Below are positions 10,741 through 38,579 of a stretch of DNA of 64,000 bases, one piece after another (positions within the stretch are counted from its first letter, which is position 1; the number at the start of each line of letters is the position of its first letter). The DNA lies in the IMG/VR virus record IMGVR_UViG_3300035698_029839, positions 186,001-250,000 of that record; one strand, written 5' to 3'. The notes below the pieces were generated by a model. It worked only from the letters and a program-made list of their open reading frames with translations. It had not been told where the DNA came from and did not search any database. The translations under genes and the position numbers were made by a program.

Positions 10741-10751
10741 TCTTAAAACAT

Positions 10752-10785: not shown

Positions 10786-10839
10786 GCTCTTTATAAATTA
10801 GTAGTGTCAAGGAAGATTATTTAATAAAGGAGATGCACC

Positions 10840-11421: not shown

Positions 11422-11427
11422 TTTGAA

Positions 11428-11453: not shown

Positions 11454-11498
11454 TACTAACGTAGAAATGAATAAATATTTTTTTTACGGAAAGGTTTT

Positions 11499-11945
11499 AT
11501 GATGAAAGTAAAAGTTGGAACAAATGAGTATTTGATGCATTGGGAGAAGCGTAAATTCAATCCTCTTACTGGCAAAAATACGGATAAAGAATTGGAATCC
11601 ACTGATTGTATTATCAGCAGATTGAATTCTGATGGAACGACAGCGGTGATTGCACGAGGCCATGTAAGTCAAACTTCTTGTGATCCGTCAAACGGTGTTA
11701 TGGCAAGAAGGTTGTCTTTTATTAAGGCAATCAAAGGTATGGATAGACTAGCACGTAAGGCATTAGGCGATGAGTACAATAGAACTTGTCGCGTTGTGCC
11801 GAGAACTCTTGGTCAGAAGAATCGCAAGTTAAGAAATCGTATCCTTGCTCTTCAAAAAGCATTAGCTATGGCTAATAGCATGATCAGTGGTGGAGAATCT
11901 CATACAGAAAAATCTGAGAAAGTAATAAAATCAGTAATGATTTAA
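11499..11945 (+). CDS. hypothetical phage protein
   Basis: 148-aa ORF downstream of the TTCCAGACAA motif, with GAAAGG RBS. Confidence 0.7.
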   Translation: MMKVKVGTNEYLMHWEKRKFNPLTGKNTDKELESTDCIISRLNSDGTTAVIARGHVSQTSCDPSNGVMARRLSFIKAIKGMDRLARKALGDEYNRTCRVVPRTLGQKNRKLRNRILALQKALAMANSMISGGESHTEKSEKVIKSVMI

Positions 11946-12022
11946 GAAGAGGAAAATTTCTCTTATTCTGGAACATATATCTTACAGATATATTGCAGAT
12001 ATATTACAATTGAATAGTCAGC

Positions 12023-12055
12023 AGGGATGTGAGTTTGTGTTTACATCCCTTTTTT
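12023..12055 (+). terminator. intrinsic terminator
   Basis: AGGGATGTGA/TTACATCCCT stem plus T-tract. Confidence 0.75.
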
Positions 12056-12131
12056 ATTTTAAAAGAGGAACTAGCTACTCCTTTATCGAATATAATAAAT
12101 AAAGGTTTATTATATAGAAGGGGAGTATAAA

Positions 12132-22536: not shown

Positions 22537-24300
22537 ATGTTTAAAAATGATTACTCTGTATTAAATAAAAAAGATTTAATAGAAAAAGTGACAAAACAAG
22601 CTGCAAAATTAGATGAACAAGATAAAAAATTAGATGAACAGTCTAAAAGATATGGATTATTATGGGAAGATAAGCCAGAGAAAGTTGTAGAACAGTGTAG
22701 AAAAAATGTTCCGTTTTTAGTGGAGCAAAAAGAAAAATCAATAAAAAGAATTGGAGACAAACCTACTCACATCTTAATAGAAGGTGAAAACTATTATTCT
22801 TTATCTGTCCTGAGTTTTACTCATAAAAATAAAATAGATATCATATATATAGATCCTCCCTACAATAATGGAAAAGACAAGTGGAAATATAATAACAATA
22901 TAGTTGATATTAAAGATTCTTATAGGCATAGCAAATGGTTATCCCTTATGAGTAAAAGACTTATTTTAGCTAAAGATCTGCTAAAAGAAGATGGAGTTTT
23001 AATATGCACAATAGATCGTCATGAATCTAATAGATTGGGTTTATTATTAGAGAAAATATTTCCTAATAAAAAAATTGTATGTGTGACTATTGTTCACAAT
23101 CCAAGAGGAACGCAAGGCAATAATTTTTCTCATACTAATGAATATGCTTATTTTGTTTATCCTAGTGATGAAAAAAGATACATACAACAAAAATTACGCA
23201 ATGAATCATCTATAGAACCTCTAAGAAGATGGGGAGGGGAATCGGAAAGAAGATATGGAAAAAATGTTTTTTATCCTTTTATTATAAAAGATTTAGAGAT
23301 AGTTGATATTGGAGAAATTCCAGACGAAGACTTTCATCCTAAAAGCTCAACAATTATTAGAGATGATGGTTTGATTGAAGTATGGCCTATTGATAAAAAT
23401 GGAATAGAAAGAAAATGGAGATATTCGGCAGACAGTGTTAAAGAAGTGATAGAAGATATTCAAGTTATAAAACAAAAAAATAGCATTGAAATTAAAATTG
23501 CCATAAGAAAAGGAAACTATAAAACAGTATGGGTAGATAAAAAATATGATGCAAGTCAACATGGGACACAATTGCTAGGAAAGATTATTGATAAAAAATT
23601 TCCTTATCCCAAATCTATTTACGCTGTAAAAGACTGCTTAAAAGCTTGTGTCCACGACAAAAAGAATGCTATTATTCTTGATTTTTTTGCTGGGTCAGCA
23701 ACAACCGCTCATGCTGTTTTAGAGTTAAATAAAGACGATGAAGGGCAACGACAATTTATTATAGGGACTAGTGAAGAAGGAGATATTTGTAGAGATATAG
23801 CTATACCTAGAATACAAAAAGTGATAAATGGATATGATGTTATTACTAAAAAATATGATTATGGACTTGATGATCTGTGTTATTCTGAAGAAAAAAATGT
23901 AGAAAAAGTTTCTGCGACTGGTGATGGGTTAAAATGTTTTAAAATAGATTTCATGGAAGGAGAAAAAATCATAGATGATATTTTAGTAGAATTTTCTCCT
24001 CATGCTGTTGAGATTATTTGTGTTAAAGAAAATTGTTTTGATGAAGTCGTGGATACTAATGAATTTAAAATTTTTAAAAATATAAATGATAAATATATTG
24101 GAATAATTTGCGAGCACAATTTAGATTATGTTAAATCTTTTGTGGAACAGGTTAAAAAAATTGATAAGAAATTTATAATTTATGTTTTTTCTTATAATTC
24201 ACATATTAGTAATGAAGGATTTGAAGAAGTAGAAAATTTAGTAGAATTACGCTCGTTCCCTTATTTTATTTTGAATATCAATGAAAGGATTCATGAATAA
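22537..24300 (+). CDS. mod: Type III restriction-modification methyltransferase (Mod)
   Basis: YGLLWE, LIEGEN, IYIDPPYN, HSKWLS, FPYPKS, DFFAGSATT. Confidence 0.9.
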   Translation: MFKNDYSVLNKKDLIEKVTKQAAKLDEQDKKLDEQSKRYGLLWEDKPEKVVEQCRKNVPFLVEQKEKSIKRIGDKPTHILIEGENYYSLSVLSFTHKNKIDIIYIDPPYNNGKDKWKYNNNIVDIKDSYRHSKWLSLMSKRLILAKDLLKEDGVLICTIDRHESNRLGLLLEKIFPNKKIVCVTIVHNPRGTQGNNFSHTNEYAYFVYPSDEKRYIQQKLRNESSIEPLRRWGGESERRYGKNVFYPFIIKDLEIVDIGEIPDEDFHPKSSTIIRDDGLIEVWPIDKNGIERKWRYSADSVKEVIEDIQVIKQKNSIEIKIAIRKGNYKTVWVDKKYDASQHGTQLLGKIIDKKFPYPKSIYAVKDCLKACVHDKKNAIILDFFAGSATTAHAVLELNKDDEGQRQFIIGTSEEGDICRDIAIPRIQKVINGYDVITKKYDYGLDDLCYSEEKNVEKVSATGDGLKCFKIDFMEGEKIIDDILVEFSPHAVEIICVKENCFDEVVDTNEFKIFKNINDKYIGIICEHNLDYVKSFVEQVKKIDKKFIIYVFSYNSHISNEGFEEVENLVELRSFPYFILNINERIHE

Positions 24301-26528
24301 TGAATTTAAAAAAATACCAAAGAAAAGCTACAAATAAAATAGTAGAAGATTTATTGGAATGGTTGGGTGAAGAGCATAATAGAGATCCTAGAAGGTTGCT
24401 TTTCAAAGGGCCTACTGCTTGTGGTAAAACATTGACGATGTTTCACTCTATGGCAGAAACTAAAAAAGAATATGAAAATGTTGTGTTTTTATACATATGT
24501 TTTAATTCTTTACCAGAACAAACTAAGAAAGAATTTGAAAATTATGCTGAGAATAATGGATCTTTAAAATGTCAAATGATTGATTCTGAAGCTCATAATA
24601 ATCTGAAACCAGGTGAAATAGGAATTATAAAGTGGCAAAAAACTAATAAGAAAAATAACAGATTAATGATTGATGGAGAAACAAAATCTAATTTAAAGAA
24701 TATTATTAAAAACATAAGAAAAAAAGGGTGTAAGGTTATATTATATATTGATGAACCTCAGCATACGGCAGGAACGGAGAATTCTCAGAATACAATAAAC
24801 ATTATTAATCCTGATATAATAATGTATATTTCTGCCACTCCAGATATGAGTATTTCTTATGATGATGAAGCTATAATAAATGAAAAAGATGTAAAAAATG
24901 CACAAATGATAAGAAAGAAAATAATCACAAATGAAAGAATAAAGTATATAAGTGGGATTGATGATTCTATATTTATAAATGCATCACTTGACAAACGAAA
25001 AAGTCTTAAGCGTGATTTCCGAAGTCTAAATTTAGATTTCAATCCTTTATTACTTATTCAACTTCCTAATTTATCAGACAAATATTATGATATAGTTTAC
25101 GAAAGAACAATAAAATCGTTAAAAGATCAAGGAATAACCTTTAAGAATGGTAAGCTTGCAATTAATATAAGTGAGGATAAGCGTAATGTTGAGTTTATCA
25201 GAGAAAATAATAGTAAAGTTGATGTATTATTATTTAAGGAGGGTCTTATATATGGTTGGAATTGTCCTAGAGCTTATTTATGTTTAATGCTTAGGGGTAT
25301 TTCTGACAATCTCATAGTTAGGACTCAACTTGAAGGTAGAATTATACGAACATTAGGACAAAAATATTATCCTATAGAATCATTAAATTATGGATATATA
25401 TATCATAACTCATTATCATTGGAAATAGAAAGTGATAATGGAGATTTATATTATAATAAGAGTGCTTGTAGAAGTAAGGATGCTCCCACAAACATACAAT
25501 TGCCTTCTAGCTCTACAGTGCAATACTCTAAATATTATAAAATAGAAAGTAATTATAAAAAGTTTTTTAATAAAGCAGCAACAACAAATAAATTAAAAAA
25601 TAATATTTCTTTAAAAGTTAAAGATTTTATGGGAAAAATAGGAACTGATGGTGAGATAAATAATTTTGATAAAACTGGAAGTGTCGAAGAGAAGATTGTT
25701 TACAAACCAATTCTTGATGAAAGGCAGTTGCAAATAATATTTGAAAAATATATTTTAGAAAAAATAAAAGTATTTCAAGAGCCTTGTGTCGGATTAAATA
25801 TGTTAAAAGATACTCTTCGTAATTATTTTGTATCTCAGCTTAATCTTTCTACAAATGGTATTTTTGTAAAAATGCAAAAGATTATATTGTCAGATAAAGA
25901 TAACAAAGCACTCTTTGACAGTGTGCTTAATGAATCAATAGAAAACTATAAAAAACATTGGCAGAAACAATGCAGAAAATCTAAAGAAAAGTTTTTTAAA
26001 ATTCCGTCTGAGCTTCATTATAGGTTGAATTCTTTTAAAAAAACGGGACATAAATTAATAAAGTCTTCTAAGTCTTATATGCAACCTTTTTATATGTTAG
26101 AGCCGACAGGTCCAGAATTACTTTTTTTAGATTGGATTCATGAAAATCCCAATGTCAAAGGATTTTATAAAAATGGGACAAAAGATAAAGAGGGCATACA
26201 TTTTGGAATAACTTATGATAAGAGCGATGGGACTTTAGGATTATTTCATCCTGACTGGCTAGTTTTTTATGTTAATGGATCTATTGGAATTTATGATACT
26301 AAAGAAGGGCGCACCGCCTCAGAAGATGATGCAGGACCAAAAGCAAAATGTCTTTATAATTATATACTAAAAGTTTCGACTATCGACAGATTATTACATG
26401 GCGGCATTGTGACATTTGAAAAAGGAAGTTGTTATATTAATAGCTTAGAAAATTATAGCTATGATCGTAATAATTTATTAAGCACTGGATGGGAAATTTT
26501 TTCTGGTAATTTCATGTTGATTTACTAA
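24300..26528 (+). CDS. res: Type III restriction endonuclease subunit (Res)
   Basis: LKKYQ, GPTACGKT, DEPQH, SATP, GWNCPRA, QLEGRIIR; C-terminal FHPDW...YDTKEG nuclease; coupled to mod. Confidence 0.87.
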   Translation: MNLKKYQRKATNKIVEDLLEWLGEEHNRDPRRLLFKGPTACGKTLTMFHSMAETKKEYENVVFLYICFNSLPEQTKKEFENYAENNGSLKCQMIDSEAHNNLKPGEIGIIKWQKTNKKNNRLMIDGETKSNLKNIIKNIRKKGCKVILYIDEPQHTAGTENSQNTINIINPDIIMYISATPDMSISYDDEAIINEKDVKNAQMIRKKIITNERIKYISGIDDSIFINASLDKRKSLKRDFRSLNLDFNPLLLIQLPNLSDKYYDIVYERTIKSLKDQGITFKNGKLAINISEDKRNVEFIRENNSKVDVLLFKEGLIYGWNCPRAYLCLMLRGISDNLIVRTQLEGRIIRTLGQKYYPIESLNYGYIYHNSLSLEIESDNGDLYYNKSACRSKDAPTNIQLPSSSTVQYSKYYKIESNYKKFFNKAATTNKLKNNISLKVKDFMGKIGTDGEINNFDKTGSVEEKIVYKPILDERQLQIIFEKYILEKIKVFQEPCVGLNMLKDTLRNYFVSQLNLSTNGIFVKMQKIILSDKDNKALFDSVLNESIENYKKHWQKQCRKSKEKFFKIPSELHYRLNSFKKTGHKLIKSSKSYMQPFYMLEPTGPELLFLDWIHENPNVKGFYKNGTKDKEGIHFGITYDKSDGTLGLFHPDWLVFYVNGSIGIYDTKEGRTASEDDAGPKAKCLYNYILKVSTIDRLLHGGIVTFEKGSCYINSLENYSYDRNNLLSTGWEIFSGNFMLIY

Positions 26529-26598
26529 TAATTTGAAAAGTGATTGAATTCTCTTTATTCTAATGTTATCTATAGAAATGTACGATATATTAGAAAAA
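26526..26598 (+). repeat. 73-bp direct repeat, right of Type III R-M genes
   Basis: Partner of 22447-22519. Confidence 0.9.
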
Positions 26599-26606
26599 GG
26601 AGATAT

Positions 26607-26855
26607 ATGAGAATACAAGATTTTGGTGAAAGCTCTTTTAAATGTAAATTATTGGCAGGTAAGGCAGAAGATGTTTTACAGGATATGCCAGAGAATATCT
26701 TCCACATGGCCGTTACAAGCCCTCCATACTGGGATCAGAGACAATATCTATTCAGTGGGGCAGTCGTACTTAACAACAATTTGAGTGAGAGTGAAAAGGA
26801 AAAAATAGAAAAAGAGTTGGAAGAGTATGGAATCAAGCCAAAAATACAAGAATAA
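26607..26855 (+). CDS. N-terminal part of split DNA methyltransferase
   Basis: AAGGAG RBS, ATG 26607; AVTSPPYWDQRQY catalytic motif. Confidence 0.85.
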   Translation: MRIQDFGESSFKCKLLAGKAEDVLQDMPENIFHMAVTSPPYWDQRQYLFSGAVVLNNNLSESEKEKIEKELEEYGIKPKIQE

Positions 26856-27441
26856 AGATTGGTTATATGACCATTATATAGTTAAAAAATTATCAACTTA
26901 TCAAATTGGGGAGTTAGTAAGCAGGGATAGCAAAACTATATATAATCACTTAAAAAAGTTTAACATACCTACAAGAACTAGAGGAGAAAATCTTTCTAAA
27001 AAAGGCAATGATAATTACATGAAACATTGTGAGAAAAATCCTTTTGAAGGTAAAAATCATTCTGAGAAAACGAAGGAAATTTTAAGAATAAAAAGTTCCA
27101 GATCGAGACCAGATCTAAGGGGCAAGAAAAACGGGATGTACGGGAAGAAAGGAAAACTCAATCCGAATTATAAGGATGGCTCTTCTAGGGAAAGACAACT
27201 GATTTACGCTAGCTCAAGATGGAAAAAAATAGTTAGAAGGACTTTTAAAAGAGACAATTATTTATGTCGGAGATGTAGCGGCCGTAGTGAATATAAAAAT
27301 CCGCTACATTCTCATCACCTGAGATCATGGGCTAACAATTTAAAAAGCAGATTCGATATTAATAATTTGGTTACGCTATGCAAGAAATGTCATAATTTTG
27401 TTCATAGTAAAAAAAATATAAATAAGGATTTTATAATATGA
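26827..27441 (+). mobile_element. HNH homing endonuclease inserted in the MTase gene
   Basis: NUMOD3-like HSEKTKE and NPNYKDG; RDNYLCRRC...HSHH...NLVTLCKKCH. Confidence 0.9.
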
Positions 27442-28406
27442 AGATATGGGATATCAAAGAAATACCAGAACACTTAAAAAAACATTTTACTGCACCAGAG
27501 TTAGGACAAGAATCGACACCAGAAGAATATGTAGAAAATTTAGTTGCTATATGCAAAGAGGTAAAAAGAGTTCTGAGGAAAGATGGAACTTTCTGGCTTA
27601 ACATAGGAGATGGGTATTGTAAGAAGGCAGTTAAATCTCTAGGAATTAAACCTAAAGATATGGTTGGAATTCCTTGGATGCTTGCGTTCGCCATGAGAAA
27701 AGATGGATGGTATTTGAGAAGCGATATCATATGGCAGAAAACAAATCCTATGCCCGAAAGCACTAAGTCTAGGCCGTCCAAATCATATGAACATTTATTT
27801 CTCTTTTCTAAATCTGATAAATATTTTTATGATTATTTTGCTATTGCTGAACCTCAAAAAGAAATTTCTATTAAACGAGCATATTCTAAAAATAAAGTGA
27901 ACAAAAGAAAAGATGCTAATAGTAATGAGTATGCTATTAGCGGAAAGTCTCAAGATAAAACTTATAAAAAGTTGATAAAAACAATAGAAGAACTTGGGCC
28001 AGGAGAACTTCTTATGTGCAATAAGAAGGACGTTTGGACATTAGCAACTGCCAATACTAAGATAAAACATTTTGCTGTTTATCCTATGGAATTAATTAAA
28101 CCATGTATTTTTGCAGGTAGTTCTTTGAAGGGTTGTTGCCCAAAATGTCAAGCTCCATGGGTTAGAGAAGATAGGAAAAAATGGGTACCAAGTTGCGATT
28201 GTGGAGAAACAGAGGCAAAAGAATGTCTTGTTTTAGATCCTTTTAATGGATCTGGAACTACTGGAATCGTGTGCAGAGAATCTCATAGAAAATATGTAGG
28301 AATAGATATTAGTGAAAAATATCTTTCATATACAAGAAGTGAATTAATAGGATCTAAAATGGATGTAGAAGAGGTAGATACTGTTGAAGAAATTATTAAA
28401 TTATAG
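27438..28406 (+). CDS. C-terminal part of split DNA methyltransferase
   Basis: LGQESTPEEYV, RVLRKDGTFWLNIGD, HFAVYP, DPFNGSGTTG; lacks the SPPY motif, which is in 26607-26855. Confidence 0.9.
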   Translation: MKIWDIKEIPEHLKKHFTAPELGQESTPEEYVENLVAICKEVKRVLRKDGTFWLNIGDGYCKKAVKSLGIKPKDMVGIPWMLAFAMRKDGWYLRSDIIWQKTNPMPESTKSRPSKSYEHLFLFSKSDKYFYDYFAIAEPQKEISIKRAYSKNKVNKRKDANSNEYAISGKSQDKTYKKLIKTIEELGPGELLMCNKKDVWTLATANTKIKHFAVYPMELIKPCIFAGSSLKGCCPKCQAPWVREDRKKWVPSCDCGETEAKECLVLDPFNGSGTTGIVCRESHRKYVGIDISEKYLSYTRSELIGSKMDVEEVDTVEEIIKL

Positions 28407-28423
28407 AAAAATATTATTTTTTA

Positions 28424-28452
28424 CTTGACAAAAGTGAAAAAAGTAGTATAAT
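28424..28452 (+). promoter_or_regulatory. sigma70-type promoter; 29-bp perfect direct repeat (left copy)
   Basis: CTTGACAAAAGTGAAAAAAGTAGTATAAT, identical at 35512-35540. Confidence 0.85.
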
Positions 28453-28555
28453 GTGTTATAAATCAGTTGAATAAGTTTATTAGCCGACATTTCAATTTTC
28501 CTGATTTTATTGAAATGTCAGAAATCGCTCCTAAAGAGCAGAAAAGGAGTTTCCT

Positions 28556-29251
28556 ATGGATTCTCAAAAACGTATCCCCATCAAACGAGCAATCGAACTA
28601 GCAAAAATCATTTCTGAACAGTATAACATAAAAAGTTATAAAGATTGGAAAAACTTTATCAAAAGAGATTCTGATTCTACAGATGTTCCTGGGCCAGGAA
28701 AGACTTTTTTATCATTTAAAGCAGCAAAAAAGTTTGTTAAGTCTCTTAATTTAAAATCTATGCAAGAGTGGAGAGTATATTGTGATGAAAATCATATTGT
28801 AAATGTTCCTTCTCATCCTGCAAAACAGTATAAAAATGAATGGATATCTTGGAGTGATTTTCTAAAAGGAGATCACGAAGTCCCTTCTAAATTTCTACCA
28901 TTTAAAGAAGCTAGAAAGATAGTAAGAAGTCTGCATTTAGAGAGCTGCAAAGAATGGGACGAATATTGCAAGTCGGGGAAAAAGCCAAAAAATATCCCAC
29001 ATAGTCCTCAACATATCTACAAAGAAAATGGATGGCTGGGCTGGGATTGTTTTTTTGGCACAGGAGTTTATAAAGATATGGATGATGAAGAAATACTATT
29101 TGATATTAAGTCAGAATTATGCTATGTCGGGGAGACAATGGAAGCGTTAAGAGGAGATATGACAGATGAAGAGATTTTAATAGCTTATGAGCAACAAGCT
29201 GTAGAGGTTATTGAGGCTATTAAAGAATACATGAAAAAATATCCAAGATAA
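28556..29251 (+). CDS. integrase-repeat (INT_rpt-like) protein
   Basis: Two full and one partial FLxFxxAxxxV...EW...IPxxP..YK..W..W.DF repeats; acidic C-terminal tail. Confidence 0.8.
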   Translation: MDSQKRIPIKRAIELAKIISEQYNIKSYKDWKNFIKRDSDSTDVPGPGKTFLSFKAAKKFVKSLNLKSMQEWRVYCDENHIVNVPSHPAKQYKNEWISWSDFLKGDHEVPSKFLPFKEARKIVRSLHLESCKEWDEYCKSGKKPKNIPHSPQHIYKENGWLGWDCFFGTGVYKDMDDEEILFDIKSELCYVGETMEALRGDMTDEEILIAYEQQAVEVIEAIKEYMKKYPR

Positions 29252-29274
29252 TATCTAGAAGATGAGGAATAATA

Positions 29275-29886
29275 ATGCAACCAGATTACGGTTTATGTGA
29301 ATTCAAGTTAGAAGCTAGAGTAAAAGGCATAGAGATGTGGAAACATATCAGTGGCCTTAACTCTATTCCTATTGATAAACAATATATTACTTTGTGTAAT
29401 GTTCAAAATCCAGATTGTGAAGGTACTGAAATAGTTCAGTTGAAAAATATGGGAGTTATTTCTTCTTATTCACAATTTATTGGGATAGACAGAGATCAAC
29501 AGATCATTGACCAAAATAGGATTTGGATTCCTGAGGCAACGTGGATATGCGAAGAATGGAGTAATGCCATTCGTAAGATTGATAACTTCAATCCTGCTTT
29601 AATATATATGGATTTAACAAGCTGGGTTTGTTCCGACAGTGTGTTGGATATCATTGATTCGACTTTGCATCTATGTCCGATATATACAGTATTATTGATA
29701 AATGTAATGACAAATAATCCTCGTAGCAATCGTATTTTTGATAATAGATATATAATAGATAATTTACCAAAAACAGTTCCACCATCAGAGATGGCTAAGT
29801 GGTCCTCAAACGTTCATAATTTTACCTATAATGCTAGTGGAAAAACTGAAATGAGAACATTTTTGATGTTTAAAAAAAAGGATTGA
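29275..29886 (+). CDS. hypothetical protein, possible Rossmann methyltransferase-like fold
   Basis: FIGIDRD and LIYMD strands resemble class I MTase motifs; no clear GxGxG. Confidence 0.35.
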   Translation: MQPDYGLCEFKLEARVKGIEMWKHISGLNSIPIDKQYITLCNVQNPDCEGTEIVQLKNMGVISSYSQFIGIDRDQQIIDQNRIWIPEATWICEEWSNAIRKIDNFNPALIYMDLTSWVCSDSVLDIIDSTLHLCPIYTVLLINVMTNNPRSNRIFDNRYIIDNLPKTVPPSEMAKWSSNVHNFTYNASGKTEMRTFLMFKKKD

Positions 29887-29890
29887 ATAA

Positions 29891-31960
29891 ATGAGTAACA
29901 AGCAAAAGGCTCAGGCAAAACAAAGGAAACGAGTAAAAAAGAGATATAGCAATATAGATAGTGTTTATGGAGTTCATATAACTTCTCACGGACCAATATC
30001 TCAGAATGCTATGTATTTTGAAAAGATTGGATTAAAGCCAAAAAAATTATGGAAATGGCAAGAAAAGGCCAGAAAAAAATCTCATGGCAGCGGTAAATCC
30101 GTCCGATTCGTTAAAAGATTTTTTGCTACCCAGGCCCCATGTGGTTCTGGAAAAACAACATTTGGAATCTCTTCAGGAGTAGATGATATTGTCTTTTCTG
30201 CTTTCGGAAGAAAACAACTTTACATAGTTCCTATGAGGCACGTAGGAACTCCATTTGCCGAGGACGGTGAGTTAAAAACCATTCTTATCAAGGTGGGTAG
30301 AAAAACATGGGAATGGCATATGCACCCCAATCATAATTTTTGCTCAAAACCTGATATCGATGAATTAATCAAATGGCTTTTAATGACACCAGAAGAAGTA
30401 ACAATGTGTCGCGATAATGTTATTAGTGGATTGAACGCTGTGTGTTGCTATCAATCATTAATCATAGCTTGGAGTAAGTTAACAAAAAAACAAAAAAAAC
30501 AAGCTATTACTAATCTTACTTTGAGGGTTGATGAAGCGCATCATCTTAAGCATGTTTTGGACGAATTGGAATTTGAGTCTGATGAATTGAAAGAAGCTTA
30601 CAAAGAGGACGCAACTGGCATAGGTAATATTTGCACTTTCATCATAAATTGTGACGAGGTTAAAACTTCAAAAATTCATACTACTAGTGCTACAATGTAC
30701 CGTGGGGATAAGAAGTTTATTTTCTCCGATTCCGTAAAAGATGTTTTTGAGTATTATAATTATTCGTGGGCTGAGCATTTTGATACACTTGATGTAAGTG
30801 AATTTAATTTGTGTTATGCAGAATATGATGTAGATCCTATCCGACAGATTGCAGATAATATTTTAGCAGAACCTAATGAATACCATCTGGTTATTTTTCC
30901 TTCTAGAGGTCACAAGTGGAGGGATAAGGATGGCTTTGAGCTGGATCTGCTTATACAATATCTGAGAGAAGGAGGTATGCCAGAAGAAAGAATTATGGAC
31001 TTGGTTACAAAAGATAAGCAAAATAAGAATAAAAAGAAACTTAGGAATGAACCTAAGGAATTTGATGCAGAAAATCTTCCTAATTTTTCGGTTATAATAG
31101 CGTGTAATCTTGGGAGAGAAGGAACTAACATACCATATTGTTCTCGTCTACATAATGCAGCATCAGAAAACTCTATTACTCAAGCTATGCAAACTTTGGG
31201 AAGATTATTAAGAAGATGGTTTGGCAAGACAAAGATTGAGTCTATTATGTATATCAATAGTTTTATTGCTCCTGAGGACACTACTAAAAAAGATTTGCTT
31301 CAAAATAGGCAAAGTGCCATGTTGTTGTGTATGGTTCTTAAAAATGAATTTATGCCAATTTTGTTTCCATTTATTCCTCCTTCAAATGAAAATAGTGAAG
31401 CAGATACACCAGACTCTGAGCCAAAGCAGACTAGCTTACAAGAGCACCTTGGTGAAAATTTTCAAAACGTAATGTTAGAGCTTTCTAGGAGACATGATGC
31501 TCTTGACGATAAAAGCGAAACTTCTGTTAACGAGATGATACATGAACTATTGAGTGATCACGGTATAACAGAAAATGTAGATATTCTGACAGAGGCTATG
31601 AAAGTTAATATACTACGTCAAACTCTGAAAAAAGATATAAATATTCTTCCTGGCTTTGATGGTTTAGTAGATTTATCTGTCATGAAGGATTTTGGATATG
31701 ATACGATACGAGAAGTTTGTCATCCGACTTTACATTTCATGAGTCATCTTGGTAATGGGAAAAAAGATTTTGCTATTATAAAGAAAATTGGAGAAATGCT
31801 TTTTACTATTAAGAAGATCAGAGGGACAGCGTATGAAGCAACGACAGATGAGATTGTGGAGCACATAAAGAAAATGGGTTGGAGTAAAAAAGAGACGTTA
31901 GAGCAGATGTCTAATGGCATTAGGGTCTCTGCCGACAAATGGGAATTTAAGAATGGGTAG
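29891..31960 (+). CDS. SF2 (DEAH) helicase/ATPase
   Basis: WKWQ, APCGSGKT, VDEAHH, SAT, REGTNIP, QTLGRLLR. Confidence 0.88.
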   Translation: MSNKQKAQAKQRKRVKKRYSNIDSVYGVHITSHGPISQNAMYFEKIGLKPKKLWKWQEKARKKSHGSGKSVRFVKRFFATQAPCGSGKTTFGISSGVDDIVFSAFGRKQLYIVPMRHVGTPFAEDGELKTILIKVGRKTWEWHMHPNHNFCSKPDIDELIKWLLMTPEEVTMCRDNVISGLNAVCCYQSLIIAWSKLTKKQKKQAITNLTLRVDEAHHLKHVLDELEFESDELKEAYKEDATGIGNICTFIINCDEVKTSKIHTTSATMYRGDKKFIFSDSVKDVFEYYNYSWAEHFDTLDVSEFNLCYAEYDVDPIRQIADNILAEPNEYHLVIFPSRGHKWRDKDGFELDLLIQYLREGGMPEERIMDLVTKDKQNKNKKKLRNEPKEFDAENLPNFSVIIACNLGREGTNIPYCSRLHNAASENSITQAMQTLGRLLRRWFGKTKIESIMYINSFIAPEDTTKKDLLQNRQSAMLLCMVLKNEFMPILFPFIPPSNENSEADTPDSEPKQTSLQEHLGENFQNVMLELSRRHDALDDKSETSVNEMIHELLSDHGITENVDILTEAMKVNILRQTLKKDINILPGFDGLVDLSVMKDFGYDTIREVCHPTLHFMSHLGNGKKDFAIIKKIGEMLFTIKKIRGTAYEATTDEIVEHIKKMGWSKKETLEQMSNGIRVSADKWEFKNG

Positions 31961-33386
31961 ACGACTAAGACAGCAAGTAGAAGGTAGTTTGCCTTGGGAC
32001 CCAGTTCTTGCCTTAGAAGCTATGGAGGAACTATTCCCTAAGGTAGAATTTCTTTCATATGAAGAAGCAAGAGAATTTGTTGGACAATTTAAATTTGAAA
32101 ATGTAAGAGATTGGAGAGAATATCGCAAATCTTATAAAAAAACTATTATTAATATACCATCTCATCCTGAGACAATTTATAAAAATGAAGGTTGGATTAG
32201 TTGGGGGGATTTCTTAGGAACGGAGAATGTTTTTAAAAAAGATTTTCTTTCTTTTAAAAAAGCTAGACAATTTGTAAGAAAGTTAGGAATAAAGAGTTAT
32301 AGAGAATGGGAAAATTATTGCAAGACTGGTAAAAAACCATGTAATATCCCTTATAGCCCAAACACAACTTATAAAGATAAAGGTTGGATTAGTTTAGGAG
32401 ATTTCCTAGGAACAGGATATATTGCTCATCAGAATAGAGTTTATTTATCCTTTAAAAAAGCAAGAGAATTTGTAAAAAAATTAAATATAGAGGGTACAAA
32501 AGAATGGTTTGAATATTGTCGTTCAGGAAAAAAACCACACAATATTCCTTCTCATCCTGATAGAGTTTATGAAGATAAAGGTTGGGTTGGTATGGGAGAA
32601 TGGTTGGGAAATGGACATATTTCTTATCAGAATAGAATTTATTTATCCCTTAAAGAAGCTAGAGGATTTATAAAAAAATTAAAATTAAAAAGCAAAACAG
32701 AATGGTTAGAATATTCTAAATATAAGAAAAGACCTAGTAATATTCCTTCTAATCCAGATAAATTTTATAAAGATATAGGGTGGGTTAGTTTTGGCGATTT
32801 TTTAGGGACAGGTTATATTTGTAATAAAGATAGAGCTTATCTGTCTTTTAAAGAAGCAAGAAAATTTGTAAAAAAATTAAAACTAAAAGATACAAAAGAA
32901 TGGAACGATTATTGTAAGTCTAGTAAAAGACCGCATAATATCTCTGCCAAACCTGAAAGGATCTATAAGGATAAGGGTTGGATTAGTTTAGGAGATTTTC
33001 TTGGGACAGGATATGTGGCTTGCGTAAACAGGACTTTTCTTTCTTTCAAAGATGCCAGGAAGATTGTAAGAAAATTGGATTTTAAGAGTTCTACAGAATG
33101 GATCGAATATTGTAAGTCAGAAAATAGACTTAATAATATACCATCTAATCCAAATAAAAATTATAAAAATGAGTGGATATCTTGGCCTGATTTTTTGGGG
33201 AATATTTCTAAAAAAACAGAAAAACAACACATAAAATTCATGAAAAAAAATAATATAATAAATAGTAATCAATGGGTTGATTATCGTAAAGATGATAATT
33301 TTCAAGGACAAGGTTATCTTACAAATCCTTGGAGAGCTTTTGGTAAAACTGCAAAACAGTTTTTTGTAGAAATAAGGAACTGTTAA
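31953..33386 (+). CDS. tandem-repeat protein 1 (shared leader, 6 INT_rpt-like repeats, 1 type-B repeat)
   Basis: ATG 31953 overlaps the helicase stop; leader MGRRLRQQVEGSLPWDPVLALEAMEELFPK. Confidence 0.85.
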   Translation: MGRRLRQQVEGSLPWDPVLALEAMEELFPKVEFLSYEEAREFVGQFKFENVRDWREYRKSYKKTIINIPSHPETIYKNEGWISWGDFLGTENVFKKDFLSFKKARQFVRKLGIKSYREWENYCKTGKKPCNIPYSPNTTYKDKGWISLGDFLGTGYIAHQNRVYLSFKKAREFVKKLNIEGTKEWFEYCRSGKKPHNIPSHPDRVYEDKGWVGMGEWLGNGHISYQNRIYLSLKEARGFIKKLKLKSKTEWLEYSKYKKRPSNIPSNPDKFYKDIGWVSFGDFLGTGYICNKDRAYLSFKEARKFVKKLKLKDTKEWNDYCKSSKRPHNISAKPERIYKDKGWISLGDFLGTGYVACVNRTFLSFKDARKIVRKLDFKSSTEWIEYCKSENRLNNIPSNPNKNYKNEWISWPDFLGNISKKTEKQHIKFMKKNNIINSNQWVDYRKDDNFQGQGYLTNPWRAFGKTAKQFFVEIRNC

Positions 33387-33388
33387 GA

Positions 33389-34179
33389 ATGAGTAGATTA
33401 AGAGTACAACTTGAAGGTAGTTTGCCTTGGAATCCTGTTCTAGTCTCAGAATCTATGGAGCAACTATTCCCTAAAAGAACAGAGCAAGAGCATATAGACG
33501 TTATAAGGGATAATAATATAAGAAGTTCTCGGAGATGGTATAAATATTGGAGAGTAAATAATCTTGAAAAACAAGGCTATATGTCTGCACCTTGGGGATC
33601 TTTTAAAAAAACTCAAAAACAGTTCTTTGAAGAAGTCTATGGCAAAAAGAAAACCGAAGAAGAACATATAGATATTATAAAAAAAAAAATATAAAAAGTA
33701 ACAAACGATGGTATGAATATTATAAAAATAATAATCTTAAAGAACAAAGCTATTGGTCATCACCTTGGGTACATTCTAATAAATCTGTGAAACAATTTTT
33801 TGAAGAAATATTTGGTAAAAATATACATAAAACAGAAAAAGAACATATATTTTTTATGAAAAAAAACAATATAAAAAGCAGTAATCAATGGTATGAATAT
33901 TGGGAAAATACTAATTTTGAAAAACAAGGTTATATATCTGCACCTTGGAGAACTTTTAACAAAACAGCAAAACAATTTTTTGAAGAAATATATGGTAAAA
34001 ATATACATAAAACAGAAAAAGAACATATATTTTTTATGAAAAAAAACAATATAAAAAGCAGTAATCAATGGTGGGAATATTATAAAAATAATAATCTTAA
34101 AGAGCAAAGTTATTATTCAAAACCTTGGCAATCTTTTAAAAAAACTATTAAACAATTTTACTCACAGGTTAAACAATGA
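33389..34179 (+). CDS. tandem-repeat protein 2 (shared leader, 4 type-B repeats), frameshifted at A11 tract 33679-33689
   Basis: Leader MSRLRVQLEGSLPWNPVLVSESMEQLFPK; adding one A joins ORFs 33389-33694 and 33787-34179 in repeat register. Confidence 0.8.
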
Positions 34180-35504
34180 GTAGACTAAGAATACAACTTG
34201 AAGGTAGTTTGCCTTGGGACCCAGTTCTTGCCTTAGAAGCTATGTTTAAACTATTCCCTAAGATAGAATTTATTTCGTTTGAAGAGGCAAGAGAATTTGT
34301 AGTAAAATTGAATTTAAAAAGTGGAGAAGAATGGAGAGAATATTGTAAAAATGATAAGCCAAAGAATATTCCTGCTTCTCCAGACAGTGTATATAAAGAT
34401 AAATGGATAAGTATGAAAAATTGGTTAGGTAATGAAATGTTGTCTTTTGAAGATGCTAGAGAAGTTGCTCGAGGGTGGGGCTTAAAGAGTTATTTAGAAT
34501 GGATAAAATTACGTAAGAAAGGTAAAAGGCCTAGAAATATACCTGTTAATCCTTCAGCGTATTATCGTGATAGTGGATGGGTTAACTTTCATGATTTTTT
34601 GGGTTTTGAACCGTTAACATATGAAGAGGCTAGATCTTTTGTAGTAAATTTAAAATTAAAAAATGAAAAAGAGTGGAAAGAATATTGCGAATCAGGTAAG
34701 AAACCATATGAGATCCCAAAAAGTCCTGGAGGTGTTTATTCTAGTAGTTGGAAAGGTATCAGAAGTTGGCTTGGAACAGAATTTTTATCATTTGAAGAAA
34801 GTAGAGGTTTTGTAAGATCATTAAATTTTCAAAAAATAGAAGAATGGCAAGAATATTGTAAGTCAGAAGAAAAACCTATTAATATACCATCCTCACCCGA
34901 CACAGTTTATCGAGATAAAGGGTGGATTGATTGGTTTAATTTCTTAGGGATAAAAAAACAAAAGTTTTTATCTTTTGAAGAAGCTAGAACTTTTGTGGTT
35001 AAATTAAAATTAAAAAGTAAAAAAGAATGGCTTAAGTACCGTAAGTCAGGAAAAAAACCATCTAATATACCATCATCACCTCATATTAAGTATAAAAAAG
35101 ATTGGAAGGGAATGAAGTATTGGATAGGTATAAATTTTTTATCTTTTGAAGAATCTAGAACTTTTGTGGTTAAATTAAAACTAAAAAGTGTTAGATACTG
35201 GGAAGAATATTGCAAGTCTGGAAAAAAACCCATCAATATCCCCTTTAGACCCTCTGTAACTTATAAAAATAAGGGGTGGATTAGTTGGGGTGATTTTTTA
35301 GGAACAGGTAATATACATAGTTCGAGTATAGTTTATAAGGAGTTCCATGACGCTAAGAAATTTGTACATAGGTTGAATATTATGACTTTTAGGGAGTGGA
35401 CAGTTTATTGCGTATCTGGTAATAAACCAATAGATATACCATCTGGTCCTAAAAAAGTATATAAAGATGAGTGGGTTGATTGGAAAGATTTTTTAGGAAA
35501 ATAA
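34176..35504 (+). CDS. tandem-repeat protein 3 (shared leader, 7 INT_rpt-like repeats)
   Basis: Leader MSRLRIQLEGSLPWDPVLALEAMFKLFPK. Confidence 0.85.
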   Translation: MSRLRIQLEGSLPWDPVLALEAMFKLFPKIEFISFEEAREFVVKLNLKSGEEWREYCKNDKPKNIPASPDSVYKDKWISMKNWLGNEMLSFEDAREVARGWGLKSYLEWIKLRKKGKRPRNIPVNPSAYYRDSGWVNFHDFLGFEPLTYEEARSFVVNLKLKNEKEWKEYCESGKKPYEIPKSPGGVYSSSWKGIRSWLGTEFLSFEESRGFVRSLNFQKIEEWQEYCKSEEKPINIPSSPDTVYRDKGWIDWFNFLGIKKQKFLSFEEARTFVVKLKLKSKKEWLKYRKSGKKPSNIPSSPHIKYKKDWKGMKYWIGINFLSFEESRTFVVKLKLKSVRYWEEYCKSGKKPINIPFRPSVTYKNKGWISWGDFLGTGNIHSSSIVYKEFHDAKKFVHRLNIMTFREWTVYCVSGNKPIDIPSGPKKVYKDEWVDWKDFLGK

Positions 35505-35511
35505 CTTTTTT

Positions 35512-35540
35512 CTTGACAAAAGTGAAAAAAGTAGTATAAT
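35512..35540 (+). promoter_or_regulatory. sigma70-type promoter; 29-bp perfect direct repeat (right copy)
   Basis: Identical to 28424-28452; followed immediately by a TTCCAGACAA motif. Confidence 0.85.
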
Positions 35541-36851
35541 TGAAAATTCCAGACAAGTGGTTTTTTAAAAAGTAATAGTAGAAGTACGTTTTTTAAACAA
35601 AAATATGATTTTTTATGAACGGAGATGTTAAAATGAAAGATGCAAGAAAAGTGTCGATTTTGGAGAAGTACGATAGTTATGAAGCCGTCCCTGCTGCTTG
35701 TATAGCTTGGATTACGATGAGAGCAAGGAAAGAGGGCAAAAGCCCCACAATGGCAAAGGCTGGTTACAAGGCAGCATTCAAGAGGATACAGAACCAAACA
35801 GAGTTCGCTATCCTCAAAGAAGATGGCGGGTATCTTGGCGGTGGTATAAGTTCTATTCCTATCCATCATGTCATTAAAGCAAGAAACGGACAGGAACTGG
35901 CATCTAAGGTCGGGATTATCTATGACGAAATCCTGGAATGCGGAGACAAAGATTCCAAATCTTACAAACTGGCAATGAAGAAAAAAGAGATCAAGATTGT
36001 CTCTCTTCTTCACGACAGAAAGACTATTACTGTCGATGGTACCAAACTTAGTATCATCAGTGAACCCGAGTACGTAAGAATCTGCTAATCTTTATTACCT
36101 AAAAAGTGGAGACAGAAATGGAAATTAAAGATTTAGGTACTTTTAAGTTATTAGATGCTATTGAAGCATGGCAAGGAGATCCGAATCTCCATCCTCTTAC
36201 TTGTGGTAGTGATAATTGCGATCATGTTTCTCTTGTCGGCAAAGTAAAAACTATAAATGATGTACTTAACATTTCTTCTCAAAAAGGTGCTACAATCTTT
36301 TTAAAATGTCCTGAATGTGATTATACTCAAGATTTTGTTCCTGATTGTGTGTATAATTGGTATATTGGGACTCACTTAAATCATAAGATTCTTCTTGGTC
36401 AAGTTGTTGAAGTTAAATTTGACGAGGACTGCGGAGCAGATGCTATATTCTTTGGTGCGGATTATAAGTTCCCAGAGGGTTGTGAGTTCCTGTCTCCCTC
36501 CCTAAAGGTAGAAGGTGATAAGGAAATAGTTTTACGATTTATAGGCAAGCTGAGAGCGTTGGTGGTAGGTTATGCAAGAGATTGTGATGAGACACCTCTC
36601 TATTGTCTTAGCAACTTGAGAGTAAAATATAACTGTGATTATATGAACGATGAATTAAATAGCAAAATGAGTGAAACTATTGTTTACAAAAAATGGGCAA
36701 AGTATCTTGAAACGGGTTGGCCTGAAGAAAGTTTAACAGTTATTGAAGGTCAATTTGTTCCTCTTTTGTATAGCTCAATTTTTGAATATGAAGATGATAT
36801 GGTTCGAAGTCTCAAATAACTTTAAAAGTAAAGGCAGACTCGACCTCATTT

Positions 36852-37280: not shown

Positions 37281-38579
37281 ATGAAAGGTTTTAAGATGAG
37301 TAGACAAAAAAAGGGTAGTGGTAAAAAAAAGGGAGGGTCTGCCCCCACTAGAAATAGGCAGTCAGTTGTTCGCGAGCTTACTCTTGCGGATAATACATCA
37401 GTGGTTCCTCAAGATATTCAGAAAAAGAAGGCTCCATATTTTGAGATAGATGTTATTAAAAAGTCTCAAAAAGGCGTAGATTATTTCTCTGGAGAAATGA
37501 GCTTAGCTCAATTAGCAGCTTTAACTCATGTAGATAACTATGACGGAGATCGTGCTGATGAGGGTGGTGGTCAAAGAGCTTTGTGCGAGTTAAGAGGAAA
37601 ACAATTCCGAGAATTTATCGTGGATTGTAATAATGTTTGTTTCGCAGAAATTCTTCTTAATGACAGAAACGGAGAGGTAGAGTTTAGATCTTTAAAAGAT
37701 ATGGGCATTACAGTTTCCGAACATGCTAAACTTGGGGCTATGCATGGGTTTTTAAAAATACCGTCTGGTGTTAAGTTGTTTGTTTACGATGGGCAAACAA
37801 GACGTTTTGGTTATTTGAGTCTGCTTCATTTTGATTTAGATATGTTTGGAACAGAAGCTTATAAGGATTATAAACATTTGAATATTCCTTTCTGTCTGTG
37901 TCAAGTTTCCGCTCGCGAAGAAACTCTTTTGTTTCTTCAGCATAATAAACAAATTTCAGTTCCCAATGACCATAAAGCTATGGTCTCGTGGCATGCTAAT
38001 AAAGACTTAAGTGATATGAAACATTATACTTATTCCGAAAAAGCAAGTTCTATTATTGCAGGGTTGATTTACATCATGGATAGAGATAGAAAAGGTCCTT
38101 GGTTTAATAGAATTGTTCAGCCTGATCTTTCTAAAGAAGAGAATAAGAGACGTTTTGGAACACACGGTGGTTTTAATACTGGCTTAAAACATTTCATTGG
38201 TTGGTTAAATAGAAATTACTGGAGTCCTGAAACTACAATCTCCGAAAAGAGCGAGGACTTGGCTGATATTTGTACAACATATTGGAGAGCTATGCAAAAG
38301 ACTTGTCCTAAGATATGGAGGAATCCTGAGAATTATATTCAGTTAAGACCTCACGGAATATCAACTTTGAGCTTACTGATGCATACTTTGTATATTGACT
38401 TTTTTGATAGAAATATTGACTGGAATATTGGAAATCTTCATACTTTTTTGAAAAAAAGTAAACTTATTACCACTCCTATAAAGTGGGAAATTGGTGGAGA
38501 TCTTCATAAAAGAGGAGGCAATTACAAAGCTCTTCAGTCCGTTGAATTTGATATTTATCAGCAAATTAAAAAGGGATAG
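37281..38579 (+). CDS. DGQHR-domain (DndB/ParB-like) protein
   Basis: GQRAL and VYDGQTR motifs, ETLLFLQHNKQ; own TTGACA-N17-TAGAAT promoter at 37230-37258. Confidence 0.75.
   Translation: MKGFKMSRQKKGSGKKKGGSAPTRNRQSVVRELTLADNTSVVPQDIQKKKAPYFEIDVIKKSQKGVDYFSGEMSLAQLAALTHVDNYDGDRADEGGGQRALCELRGKQFREFIVDCNNVCFAEILLNDRNGEVEFRSLKDMGITVSEHAKLGAMHGFLKIPSGVKLFVYDGQTRRFGYLSLLHFDLDMFGTEAYKDYKHLNIPFCLCQVSAREETLLFLQHNKQISVPNDHKAMVSWHANKDLSDMKHYTYSEKASSIIAGLIYIMDRDRKGPWFNRIVQPDLSKEENKRRFGTHGGFNTGLKHFIGWLNRNYWSPETTISEKSEDLADICTTYWRAMQKTCPKIWRNPENYIQLRPHGISTLSLLMHTLYIDFFDRNIDWNIGNLHTFLKKSKLITTPIKWEIGGDLHKRGGNYKALQSVEFDIYQQIKKG

What the first reader, a model, noticed from the sequence alone, without database searches (positions are those of the whole stretch)
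28556..35504. SF2 helicase with three tandem-repeat proteins sharing one N-terminal peptide: possible interchangeable specificity subunits
Seen: three consecutive genes (31953, 33389, 34176) start with the same roughly 29-aa leader, RLRxQxEGSLPW(D/N)PVLxxE(A/S)MxxLFPK; 45 nt are identical between copies 1 and 3. They then carry different arrays of roughly 60-66-aa repeats: 6 type A plus 1 type B; 4 type B; 7 type A. Type A is INT_rpt-like (FLSFxEARxFV...EW...IPSxP..YK..W..W.DFLG). Type B (KTEKEHI.FMKKNNI.S..QW......GY...PW..F.KT.KQFF) I do not recognise. The first gene overlaps the stop of a DEAH helicase. Upstream lie an MTase-fold-like ORF and a fourth repeat protein lacking the leader. Established: INT_rpt-like repeats are often fused to SF2 helicases. 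Inference: here the fusion is replaced by a docking peptide, so one motor could use several modular, TALE/zinc-finger-like DNA readers. The shared leader DNA could also serve as a recombination handle for swapping arrays.
Basis: partly seen in the sequence, partly recalled or inferred. Interest (0 to 1): 0.8.

Follow-up and report, generated by a model that had tools for sequence, protein, structure and literature searches.

The report
Helicase operon with leader-tagged DNA-binding proteins
A jumbo phage from a salt lake carries a conserved operon in which an unusual helicase and a methyltransferase-shaped partner are followed by several basic repeat proteins that all start with the same 29-residue tag, and related phages repeat this layout with their own tags, which suggests one motor served by exchangeable DNA-binding subunits, though no interaction has been shown.

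Summary
Three consecutive genes (31953, 33389, 34176) begin with one ~29-aa leader, with 45 identical nt between copies 1 and 3. They carry 6A+1B, 4B and 7A repeats. Type A is Pfam INT_rpt. Gene 1 overlaps the stop of a DEAH helicase by 8 nt.

Comparative data add three results.
- The core (a ~200-aa class-I-methyltransferase-fold protein plus this helicase, then overlapping genes for small helical repeat proteins) recurs in about ten loci, including the cultured jumbo phage Tunturi 5.
- The leader is rare: 13 clusters among 1.84 billion representatives. Wherever context was recoverable it lies in this operon.
- The leader is portable. One relative has six tagged genes, one of them a non-repeat DUF3102 protein. 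At least four other lineages have their own different N-terminal element shared by the genes downstream of the helicase.

Best reading (confidence ~0.45): the tag recruits alternative DNA-binding modules to a common partner, most simply the helicase/methyltransferase-fold pair, making this a split form of helicase–INT_rpt/HA fusions.

A TALE-like code is not supported, and a recombination-handle role could not be resolved. No interaction, DNA binding or virion location was tested. Rivals are a T4-like packaging signal, a plain inherited N-cap, and a nucleotide-level start-region constraint.

The parts
28556..29251 (+). First gene of the module: one half-unit plus two INT_rpt-like units, no leader, acidic helical C-terminal tail (pI 4.2)
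   Evidence: (INT_rpt E=3.3e-4, below threshold). Syntenic homologues of 236-266 aa in L005, L006, L007 and L011.
29275..29886 (+). 203-aa protein with a class I SAM-methyltransferase (Rossmann) fold. No glycine-rich SAM loop is evident. It is the most conserved partner of the helicase.
   Evidence: AF2 pLDDT 83, pTM 0.84. Foldseek against PDB gives 455 hits at E<=1e-3, all 50 listed being SAM methyltransferases or MTase-fold chains, TM ~0.55. ESM Atlas lead. 42-88% identity across six loci. 64 unnamed clusters.
29891..31960 (+). Divergent SF2 DEAH helicase/translocase (689 aa) with an uncharacterised ~230-aa C-terminal region
   Evidence: GSGKT, VDEAHH and QTLGRLLRR motifs. Pfam Helicase_C 21.3 bits (cut-off 23.5). 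PHROG 16 weak. 16 homologous clusters. No PDB sequence relative, even with a profile.
31953..33386 (+). g1: leader, then 6 type A (INT_rpt) units and 1 type B unit; pI 9.7. The start overlaps the helicase stop by 8 nt.
31953..32042 (+). Leader copy 1 (30 aa)
33389..33694 (+). g2, 5' piece: leader, type B unit 1 and the start of unit 2, ending at a stop after the frame shift
33389..33475 (+). Leader copy 2 (29 aa)
33679..33689 (+). A11 homopolymer where the g2 reading frame shifts by -1. A12 would be in frame.
   Evidence: No contig from four runs spans it.
33631..34179 (+). g2, 3' piece in the -1 frame: the rest of unit 2 plus type B units 3 and 4
34176..35504 (+). g3: leader, then 7 type A (INT_rpt) units; pI 9.6. 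ATGA overlap with the g2 stop.
34176..34262 (+). Leader copy 3 (29 aa)
   Evidence: AF2: residues 1-10 pLDDT 51, helix at 16-26.

Best explanation
This is a conserved jumbo-phage operon. A divergent SF2 DEAH helicase and a small methyltransferase-fold protein form the invariant core. Directly downstream, with overlapping or abutting stop and start codons, lie one to six genes for basic DNA-binding proteins. In this lineage they are INT_rpt arrays (type A), a divergent INT_rpt-like array (type B) and, in relatives, a DUF3102 protein.

Each downstream protein starts with the same ~29-residue tag. The tag's most conserved N-terminal half is not predicted to be part of the repeat fold.

The most likely mechanism is that the tag is a common recruitment peptide. 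It brings alternative DNA-binding modules to one shared partner, most simply the helicase/methyltransferase-fold pair encoded just upstream. The operon would then be a split, multi-subunit version of the helicase-INT_rpt and helicase-HA fusions seen elsewhere.

Shown here: the anatomy, the synteny, the portability of the tag, the lineage-specific tags, and the folds.
Inferred: DNA binding by the arrays, the tag-partner contact, and the identity of the partner.
For: 1. Synteny.
- An MTase-fold protein plus helicase plus downstream repeat genes occur in L005, L006, L007, L008, L009, L011, L015 and L016. The upstream 199-210-aa ORFs of L008 and L009 were identified by alignment.
- Helicase plus repeat genes also occur in the cultured phage Tunturi 5.

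2. The leader is rare and confined.
- It matches 13 clusters among 1.84e9 representatives. Ten of these matches are at the N-terminus; P0025 and P0026 carry it internally, and P0029 and P0030 are low-complexity matches.
- All long enough to judge are followed by type A or B units.
- Wherever context exists, the tagged genes lie in the helicase operon.

3. Portability. L011 has six consecutive tagged genes: B x7, A x5, A (about 6), DUF3102 (32.8 bits against a cut-off of 24.4), A x2 and A x5.

4. Lineage-specific shared N-termini.
- L006: two genes, 72% identical to each other and 16% to the window type.
- L008: four genes.
- L015: three genes with an identical 20-aa start.
- L016: two genes.
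- Tunturi 5: gp99 and gp98.

5. Structure. In the AF2 model of leader plus two units (pLDDT 89), residues 1-10 score 51 and residues 11-20 score 80, with one extra helix at 16-26. The invariant QLEGSLPW stretch therefore lies outside regular secondary structure.

6. The arrays are strongly basic, pI 9.6-9.8. INT_rpt is found fused to Helicase_C/ResIII, GIY-YIG, DUF559 and integrases.

7. Gene junctions suggest coupled expression: an 8-nt overlap, a 2-nt gap and a 4-nt overlap.
Against: - No interaction was predicted or measured, because no multimer tool was available.
- L009's two downstream genes share no obvious leader.
- The tag may bind another partner or direct the proteins elsewhere.
- Codons 2-10 of the leader show almost no synonymous variation (4/105 against 50/180 for codons 11-29). 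Part of the conservation is therefore at the nucleotide level.
- Neither the helicase nor the methyltransferase-fold protein has a characterised relative that would indicate a binding site.
- DNA binding by INT_rpt is inferred from its fusion partners and its charge only.
Confidence: 0.45

Rival explanations
1. The leader is a targeting or packaging signal, like the capsid targeting sequence of T4 internal proteins. Under this reading, diverse basic DNA-binding cargo is loaded into the head (or another phage compartment) and delivered with the DNA. The helicase is merely a neighbour or a co-delivered protein.
For: - A short conserved N-terminal element on diverse, fast-evolving, basic cargo encoded in tandem matches the T4 IP/CTS logic (my own knowledge).
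- The operon lies among restriction-modification and DNA-modification genes: a type III RM, DNA methyltransferases and a DGQHR/DndB-like gene. L011 and L009 have AcrVA2-like neighbours. This fits an anti-restriction role.
- A Glu at leader position 21 is kept in 13 of 14 copies.
Against: - That Glu is K or Q in P0028, P0025 and P0031 and lies inside the predicted helix.
- L006-type leaders have no such Glu.
- Strict adjacency to the helicase across lineages with unrelated tags is not explained.
- No structural genes are nearby.
- No virion proteomics exist, including for Tunturi 5.
Confidence: 0.18
2. The leader has no separate function. It would be the N-terminal cap of the first repeat, inherited through tandem gene duplication and domain shuffling, and kept because it stabilises the first unit.
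For: - The second half of the leader forms a confident helix ending in LFPK, immediately before unit 1 (pLDDT 80-89).
- LFPK or FFPQ is kept even in the divergent L006 and L007 leaders.
- By eye, the leader resembles the C-terminal half of a type B unit.
Against: - The same leader heads a DUF3102 protein that has no repeat unit.
- It heads type B arrays whose units differ from type A.
- Its identity (~70% between paralogues and between genomes) is well above that of the repeats (~45-50%).
- Profile comparisons of the leader with type A or type B units are not significant (P=0.08 and 0.16).
- Five further lineages each keep a shared N-terminal element.
Confidence: 0.2
3. The conserved element acts at the nucleic-acid level. 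It could be a shared translation-initiation or coupling region, an operator for a translational regulator, or a homology patch for recombination between arrays.
For: - Codons 2-10 use one codon almost exclusively across 14 copies from 5 loci (4/105 minor codons against 50/180 later).
- There is an 18-nt exact core in all three window copies and a 45-nt identity between copies 1 and 3.
- Array number and order differ between close relatives: 3 genes here against 6 in L011, and a B array comes first in L005 and L011.
- L010 is 98.7% identical up to the end of unit 1 and then diverges.
Against: - No stable or shared RNA fold was found (z from -0.8 to +1.6), and there is no Rfam match.
- Codons 11-29 vary synonymously while the peptide is kept, so selection acts on the protein too.
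- Leaders are about as alike between genomes as within them, which gives no sign of ongoing gene conversion.
- Read joints all had sides under 30 nt and are unreliable.
- A/T-rich early codons are common at gene starts in any AT-rich genome.
Confidence: 0.1

Closest known systems
SF2 helicases with C-terminal HA (PF03457) or INT_rpt (PF14882) repeats
   Same: An SF2 motor is associated with arrays of ~55-65-aa helical repeats. Atlas clusters combine Helicase_C/ResIII with INT_rpt. In L008 and L016, the N-termini of the downstream genes give weak hits to the second half of the HA profile (E 0.002-0.03).
   Different: Here the repeats are separate polypeptides, present as 1-6 paralogues, each with a shared N-terminal tag, and a methyltransferase-fold partner is present. 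The window's leader itself does not match HA.
Type I restriction-modification enzymes (one HsdR motor and HsdM with exchangeable HsdS specificity subunits)
   Same: The logic is similar: a translocase plus a methyltransferase-type subunit, with target choice delegated to a separate, variable DNA-binding subunit.
   Different: There is no sequence or domain relationship. No PADLOC hit beyond weak Cas3/PbeA matches, no TRD architecture, and no evidence of methylation or cleavage. This is an analogy only.
T4 internal proteins with a capsid targeting sequence
   Same: A short conserved N-terminal leader on diverse, basic, rapidly evolving cargo encoded in tandem.
   Different: The leader is three times longer. 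No conserved protease site could be shown, and the genes are tied to a helicase operon rather than to head genes. Virion location is untested.
Phage receptor-binding proteins with a conserved N-terminal anchor and variable C-terminal modules; polymorphic toxin cassettes
   Same: A conserved N-terminal adaptor shared by tandem paralogues with swappable C-terminal parts.
   Different: The cargo here consists of intracellular-type DNA-binding domains, not tail fibres or toxins.

Membership tests
Pfam INT_rpt (PF14882) | Profile match above the gathering score | tested here: met
   g1 65.6 bits and g3 63.3 bits against a cut-off of 26.5. The 28556 ORF scores only 21.3 bits.
Pfam INT_rpt (PF14882), type B repeat | Profile match or demonstrable homology to type A | tested here: inconclusive
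   No Pfam hit. hhalign of type A against type B gives P=2.7e-4 over 38 columns. The type B HMM weakly hits helix 1-2 of type A units. The nearest Atlas clusters are INT_rpt at 0.86-0.87, which is a lead only.
SF2 helicase | Walker A (motif I), DExH (motif II) and an arginine-rich motif VI, in order | tested here: met
   APCGSGKT, VDEAHH and QTLGRLLRR are read and are invariant in the 15-sequence alignment.
SF2 helicase | Curated profile match above threshold | tested here: not met
   Helicase_C 21.3 bits against 23.5. ResIII is only weak in homologues. cas3_core 16.5 bits against 102.
Class I SAM-dependent methyltransferase | Seven-stranded Rossmann-like fold | tested here: met
   AF2 pTM 0.84. 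455 PDB hits at E<=1e-3, all 50 listed being SAM methyltransferases or MTase-fold chains.
Class I SAM-dependent methyltransferase | Glycine-rich SAM loop after strand 1, acidic residue after strand 2 | tested here: inconclusive
   Strand 1 is followed by CNxQ...EG, not GxGxG. The invariant G70/D72 after strand 2 fits the acidic residue. No Pfam or NCBIfam hit.
HA, helicase-associated domain (PF03457) | Profile match in the window's leader or repeats | tested here: not met
   No HA hit in any window protein. Window-type leaders against the HA-like leaders of L008 and Tunturi 5 give hhalign P=0.16.
T4-type capsid targeting sequence | Shared N-terminal leader on unrelated cargo | tested here: met
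T4-type capsid targeting sequence | Conserved prohead-protease site at the end of the leader; proteins present in virions | not testable with these tools
   The Glu at position 21 is not universal. No proteomics exist.
TALE-like programmable repeats | Near-identical units with one or two hypervariable positions | tested here: not met
   Units are 38-57% identical to the reference unit, and variability is scattered over at least 8 columns.
Programmed frameshift or transcriptional slippage site | Slippery run conserved in relatives at the same place | tested here: not met
   The A11 run is present, but the intact type B genes of L004 and L011 and P0027 have no such run. Reads did not resolve its length.

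The most novel reading that the evidence does not exclude
One phage SF2 motor, together with its methyltransferase-fold partner, is programmed by a set of interchangeable, separately encoded DNA-binding subunits that dock through a lineage-specific N-terminal peptide. This would be a new class of multi-specificity DNA translocase or modifier in jumbo phages. It is analogous in logic to type I restriction-modification specificity subunits but unrelated in sequence, and it may be used for host takeover or anti-defence.
Probability: 0.3. Interest if true: 0.8.

Novelty: new variant of a known kind. Interest (0 to 1): 0.62.

Why it matters
Helicases fused to HA or INT_rpt repeats are common but almost unstudied, and the function of these repeats is not known. 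This operon separates the motor from the repeat modules and marks every module with a recognisable tag. That turns a vague domain association into testable pairwise interactions.

The pattern recurs in at least six jumbo-phage lineages, from salt lakes, marine water and tundra soil. One of them is a cultured phage, Tunturi 5 (gp100, gp99, gp98), so experiments are possible.

If the tag is a docking peptide, this would be a natural system of exchangeable DNA-targeting subunits for a translocase. If it is a packaging signal, it would identify a new family of injected DNA-binding proteins in jumbo phages.

Either way, the work defines two unannotated protein families: the helicase (16 clusters) and the methyltransferase-fold partner (64 clusters).

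Tried and rejected
- Leader as a half repeat: hhalign of the leader profile against type B and type A units was not significant (P=0.16 and 0.08).
- Leader homologous to the HA-like leaders of L008 and Tunturi 5: it looked convincing by eye, but hhalign gave P=0.16.
- RNA element in the leader DNA: folds of five copies differ and z-scores run from -0.8 to +1.6. Rfam gave no match at E<=0.1 in 26000-36500.
- Solved-structure relatives of the INT_rpt fold: Foldseek of the two-unit model against PDB gave nothing below E=3. The profile against PDB sequences gave only weak PASTA-domain hits (E=0.019), which I treat as chance.
- Helicase relatives in PDB, by single sequence and by profile: none.
- PADLOC: nothing for the module apart from weak Cas3/PbeA matches.
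- Reads: four salt-lake runs are low-depth contigs. None spans the A11 run, and all joints have sides under 30 nt, so neither the frame shift nor array rearrangements could be judged.
- megablast of the region against GenBank phages: no match.
- tblastn of the 203-aa protein against GenBank phages: no match.
- Literature on INT_rpt, DUF3102 and Tunturi 5: nothing functional. The HA-domain NMR paper cited in PMC12191111 could not be opened.
- Protease-site reading of the leader: the candidate Glu is not universal.
Full report
**Source and setting**

The window is part of IMG/VR contig IMGVR_UViG_3300035698_029839, which is 297,710 bp and therefore a jumbo phage. It is about 30% G+C, and all substantial ORFs are on the + strand. 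There is a cluster of 13 tRNA genes near its end. Near-identical sequence occurs in salt-lake metagenomes. The region has no nucleotide match in GenBank phages.

**Observation**

- Genes starting at 31953, 33389 and 34176 begin with one ~29-aa leader.
- The longest exact DNA identity between copies 1 and 3 is 45 nt (31980-32024 against 34200-34244). There are no further copies in the window.
- The repeat content is 6 type A plus 1 type B; 4 type B; and 7 type A.
- Type A is Pfam INT_rpt, well above threshold.
- The first tagged gene overlaps the helicase stop by 8 nt. The next junctions are a 2-nt gap and an ATGA overlap.

One point was missed. Gene 2 is interrupted. Frame 1 ends at 33694, and the remaining units continue in the -1 frame (open from 33631). 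The switch lies in an A11 run at 33679-33689. One more A would give an in-frame unit like its neighbours. Intact type B genes in relatives have no such run. A sequencing or assembly error, or a recent mutation, is therefore more likely than a programmed shift. Public contigs did not span the run.

**Type B**

- The type B HMM weakly hits the first two helices of type A units.
- Profile-profile comparison gives P=2.7e-4 over 38 columns.
- The nearest language-model clusters are INT_rpt, a lead only.

Type B is best described as a divergent relative of INT_rpt that Pfam does not yet cover.

**The other module proteins**

The helicase (29891-31960):
- It has Walker A, DEAH and motif VI in order.
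- It only grazes curated profiles.
- It has no solved relative by sequence or by profile.
- It belongs to a family of 16 clusters found on contigs of up to 472 kb.

The 203-aa protein (29275-29886):
- It is more conserved than the helicase: 42-54% identity where the helicase shows 39-45%.
- It has no family annotation in any library, and its 64 clusters carry no source names.
- It models confidently as a class I methyltransferase fold (lead).
- It lacks the usual glycine-rich loop, so activity is open.

The 231-aa protein (28556-29251) has two INT_rpt-like units and an acidic tail.

The arrays are strongly basic, pI 9.6-9.8.

**Comparative genomics**

This is the main new evidence.

Close relatives (helicase ~80% identical):
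- L005 has the same gene order, and a tagged type B gene overlaps the helicase stop.
- L011 has a DNA methyltransferase, a 240-aa protein, a 203-aa protein and the helicase, then six consecutive tagged genes. These are B x7, A x5, A (about 6), a DUF3102 protein, A x2 and A x5. Homologues of the window's next two ORFs follow.
- L013 shows the helicase C-terminus followed by a tagged B x5 gene.
- L004 holds three tagged genes in a row after a DUF3102-like gene. This matches the inner part of the L011 layout, as does the P0002 contig.

A profile of the leader searched against 1.84 billion cluster representatives found 13 matches. Ten are N-terminal, two (P0025, P0026) are internal, and P0029 and P0030 are low-complexity matches. 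All long enough to judge are followed by type A or B units. The leader is therefore rare and, where context exists, confined to this operon.

More distant relatives:
- At 44-45% helicase identity (L006, L007), the downstream INT_rpt gene starts with a different ~30-aa N-terminus. In L006 the DUF3102 gene starts with that same L006-type N-terminus: 72% identity between the two, 16% to the window type.
- At 37-39% identity, the helicase and the methyltransferase-fold protein persist, but the downstream genes carry other repeat families.
  - L008 has four genes with a shared HA-like N-terminus.
  - L015 has three genes with an identical 20-aa start.
  - L016 has two genes with an HA-like N-terminus and non-repeat cargo.
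  - L009 has two repeat genes without an obvious shared leader.
- In the cultured jumbo myovirus Tunturi 5, gp100 (helicase, 39% identity) is followed by gp99 and gp98. These repeat proteins share about 45 N-terminal residues. Its upstream 207-aa protein is not similar to the 203-aa protein.

**The leader itself**

- In an AF2 model of leader plus two units (pLDDT 89), each unit is two longer and two short helices. The leader adds one helix (residues 16-26). The first ten residues score 51, so the invariant QLEGSLPW stretch is not part of a confidently folded element.
- No solved fold resembles the model.
- Across 14 copies from five loci, codons 11-29 vary synonymously while the peptide is kept. 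Codons 2-10 almost never vary. There is therefore selection on the protein, plus an added nucleotide-level constraint at the very start.
- No stable or shared RNA fold was found, and there is no Rfam match.
- Leaders are about as similar between genomes as within them. This points to purifying selection rather than ongoing gene conversion among close relatives. The wholesale difference between the window-type and L006-type leaders, on the same two kinds of cargo, shows concerted change at greater depth.

**Mechanism**

Several facts fit a recruitment peptide that ties alternative DNA-binding modules to a common partner:
- the tag is portable and sits on three kinds of cargo;
- each lineage has its own tag;
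- the tagged genes always lie directly after the helicase, with coupled junctions;
- fused helicase-INT_rpt proteins exist.

The helicase/methyltransferase-fold pair is the simplest candidate partner. I give this about 0.45.

It is not shown. A packaging or targeting signal in the manner of T4 internal proteins (0.18), a plain structural N-cap (0.2) and a nucleic-acid-level element (0.1) remain open. A further variant is that the methyltransferase-fold protein recognises the tag as a substrate. N-terminal protein methyltransferases are among the fold hits, but so are many other classes.

The recombination-handle idea has no direct support. However, array number and order do differ between close relatives, and L010 diverges exactly at a unit boundary. 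That divergence may be an assembly artefact.

**Comparison with known systems, and novelty**

The parts are known kinds: an SF2 helicase, INT_rpt, DUF3102 and a methyltransferase fold. The arrangement is not described in the literature I could search. That arrangement is a conserved motor pair followed by a variable set of separately encoded DNA-binding proteins, unified by a lineage-specific N-terminal tag. I rate it a new variant of a known kind (helicase-associated repeat proteins), with interest 0.62.

**Limits**

- No multimer prediction, binding data or expression data were available.
- Many relatives are short metagenomic contigs.
- The HA assignments of the distant leaders are all below the Pfam threshold.
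- The status of gene 2 is unresolved.

Noticed in passing
window 22537-26528: The phage encodes what looks like a complete type III restriction-modification pair. 22537-24300 matches type III Mod methyltransferases (PADLOC MTase_III, E=7e-77). The abutting 24300-26528 has a ResIII domain and matches type III Res weakly.
   Followed up: partly
window 26607-28397: An N6/N4 DNA methyltransferase gene is split. Residues 1-51, including the SPPY motif, map to 26607-26759, and residues 52-353 map to 27498-28397 when compared with the intact L011 homologue. The 738-nt insert carries an HNH endonuclease ORF (26827-27441). The insert contains stops, so it is not an intein. No group I intron was detected by Rfam.
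   Followed up: partly
window 33679-33689: An A11 run breaks gene 2. The frame-1 product would be a 101-aa leader-plus-one-unit protein, and A12 would restore a four-unit array. This could be an error, a mutation or slippage. Contigs from four runs stop short of the run.
   Followed up: partly
window 31953-31982 and equivalents in L004, L005, L011, L013: The first ten codons of the leader use nearly a single codon each across 14 copies (4/105 minor codons against 50/180 for codons 11-29). The GSLP codons can form a small GGUA...URCC hairpin, but fold energies are not above shuffles.
   Followed up: partly
L010:1-1096 (ERZ27315476) against window 31280-32219: A contig 98.7% identical to the window up to the last base of g1 unit 1 then continues with unrelated sequence and gives a 114-aa tagged protein (P0022). 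It is either a strain with a truncated array or an assembly break at a repeat.
   Followed up: partly
L006:11059-11616: One protein combines the L006-type leader, a single type A unit and a DUF3102 domain. This shows domain shuffling between the array and DUF3102 genes.
   Followed up: yes
window 37281-38579: A DGQHR/DndB-like protein (NCBIfam TIGR03187, 81.6 bits; Pfam DndB) lies a few genes downstream of the operon.
   Followed up: no
window 35615-36819: The two ORFs after the arrays (157 aa and 237 aa, no family hits) are syntenic with L011 13516-14742. They may belong to the same unit.
   Followed up: no
window 9013-14211 and 60009-63673: An RNA-repair-type gene set is present: PHROG 850 'RNA-binding protein' at 9013-10740 and an RNA ligase at 13003-14211. 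There is also a cluster of 13 tRNA genes.
   Followed up: no
L011:14900-15898 and L009:4343-5401: AcrVA2-like proteins lie near the helicase operon in two relatives. None was looked for in the window.
   Followed up: no
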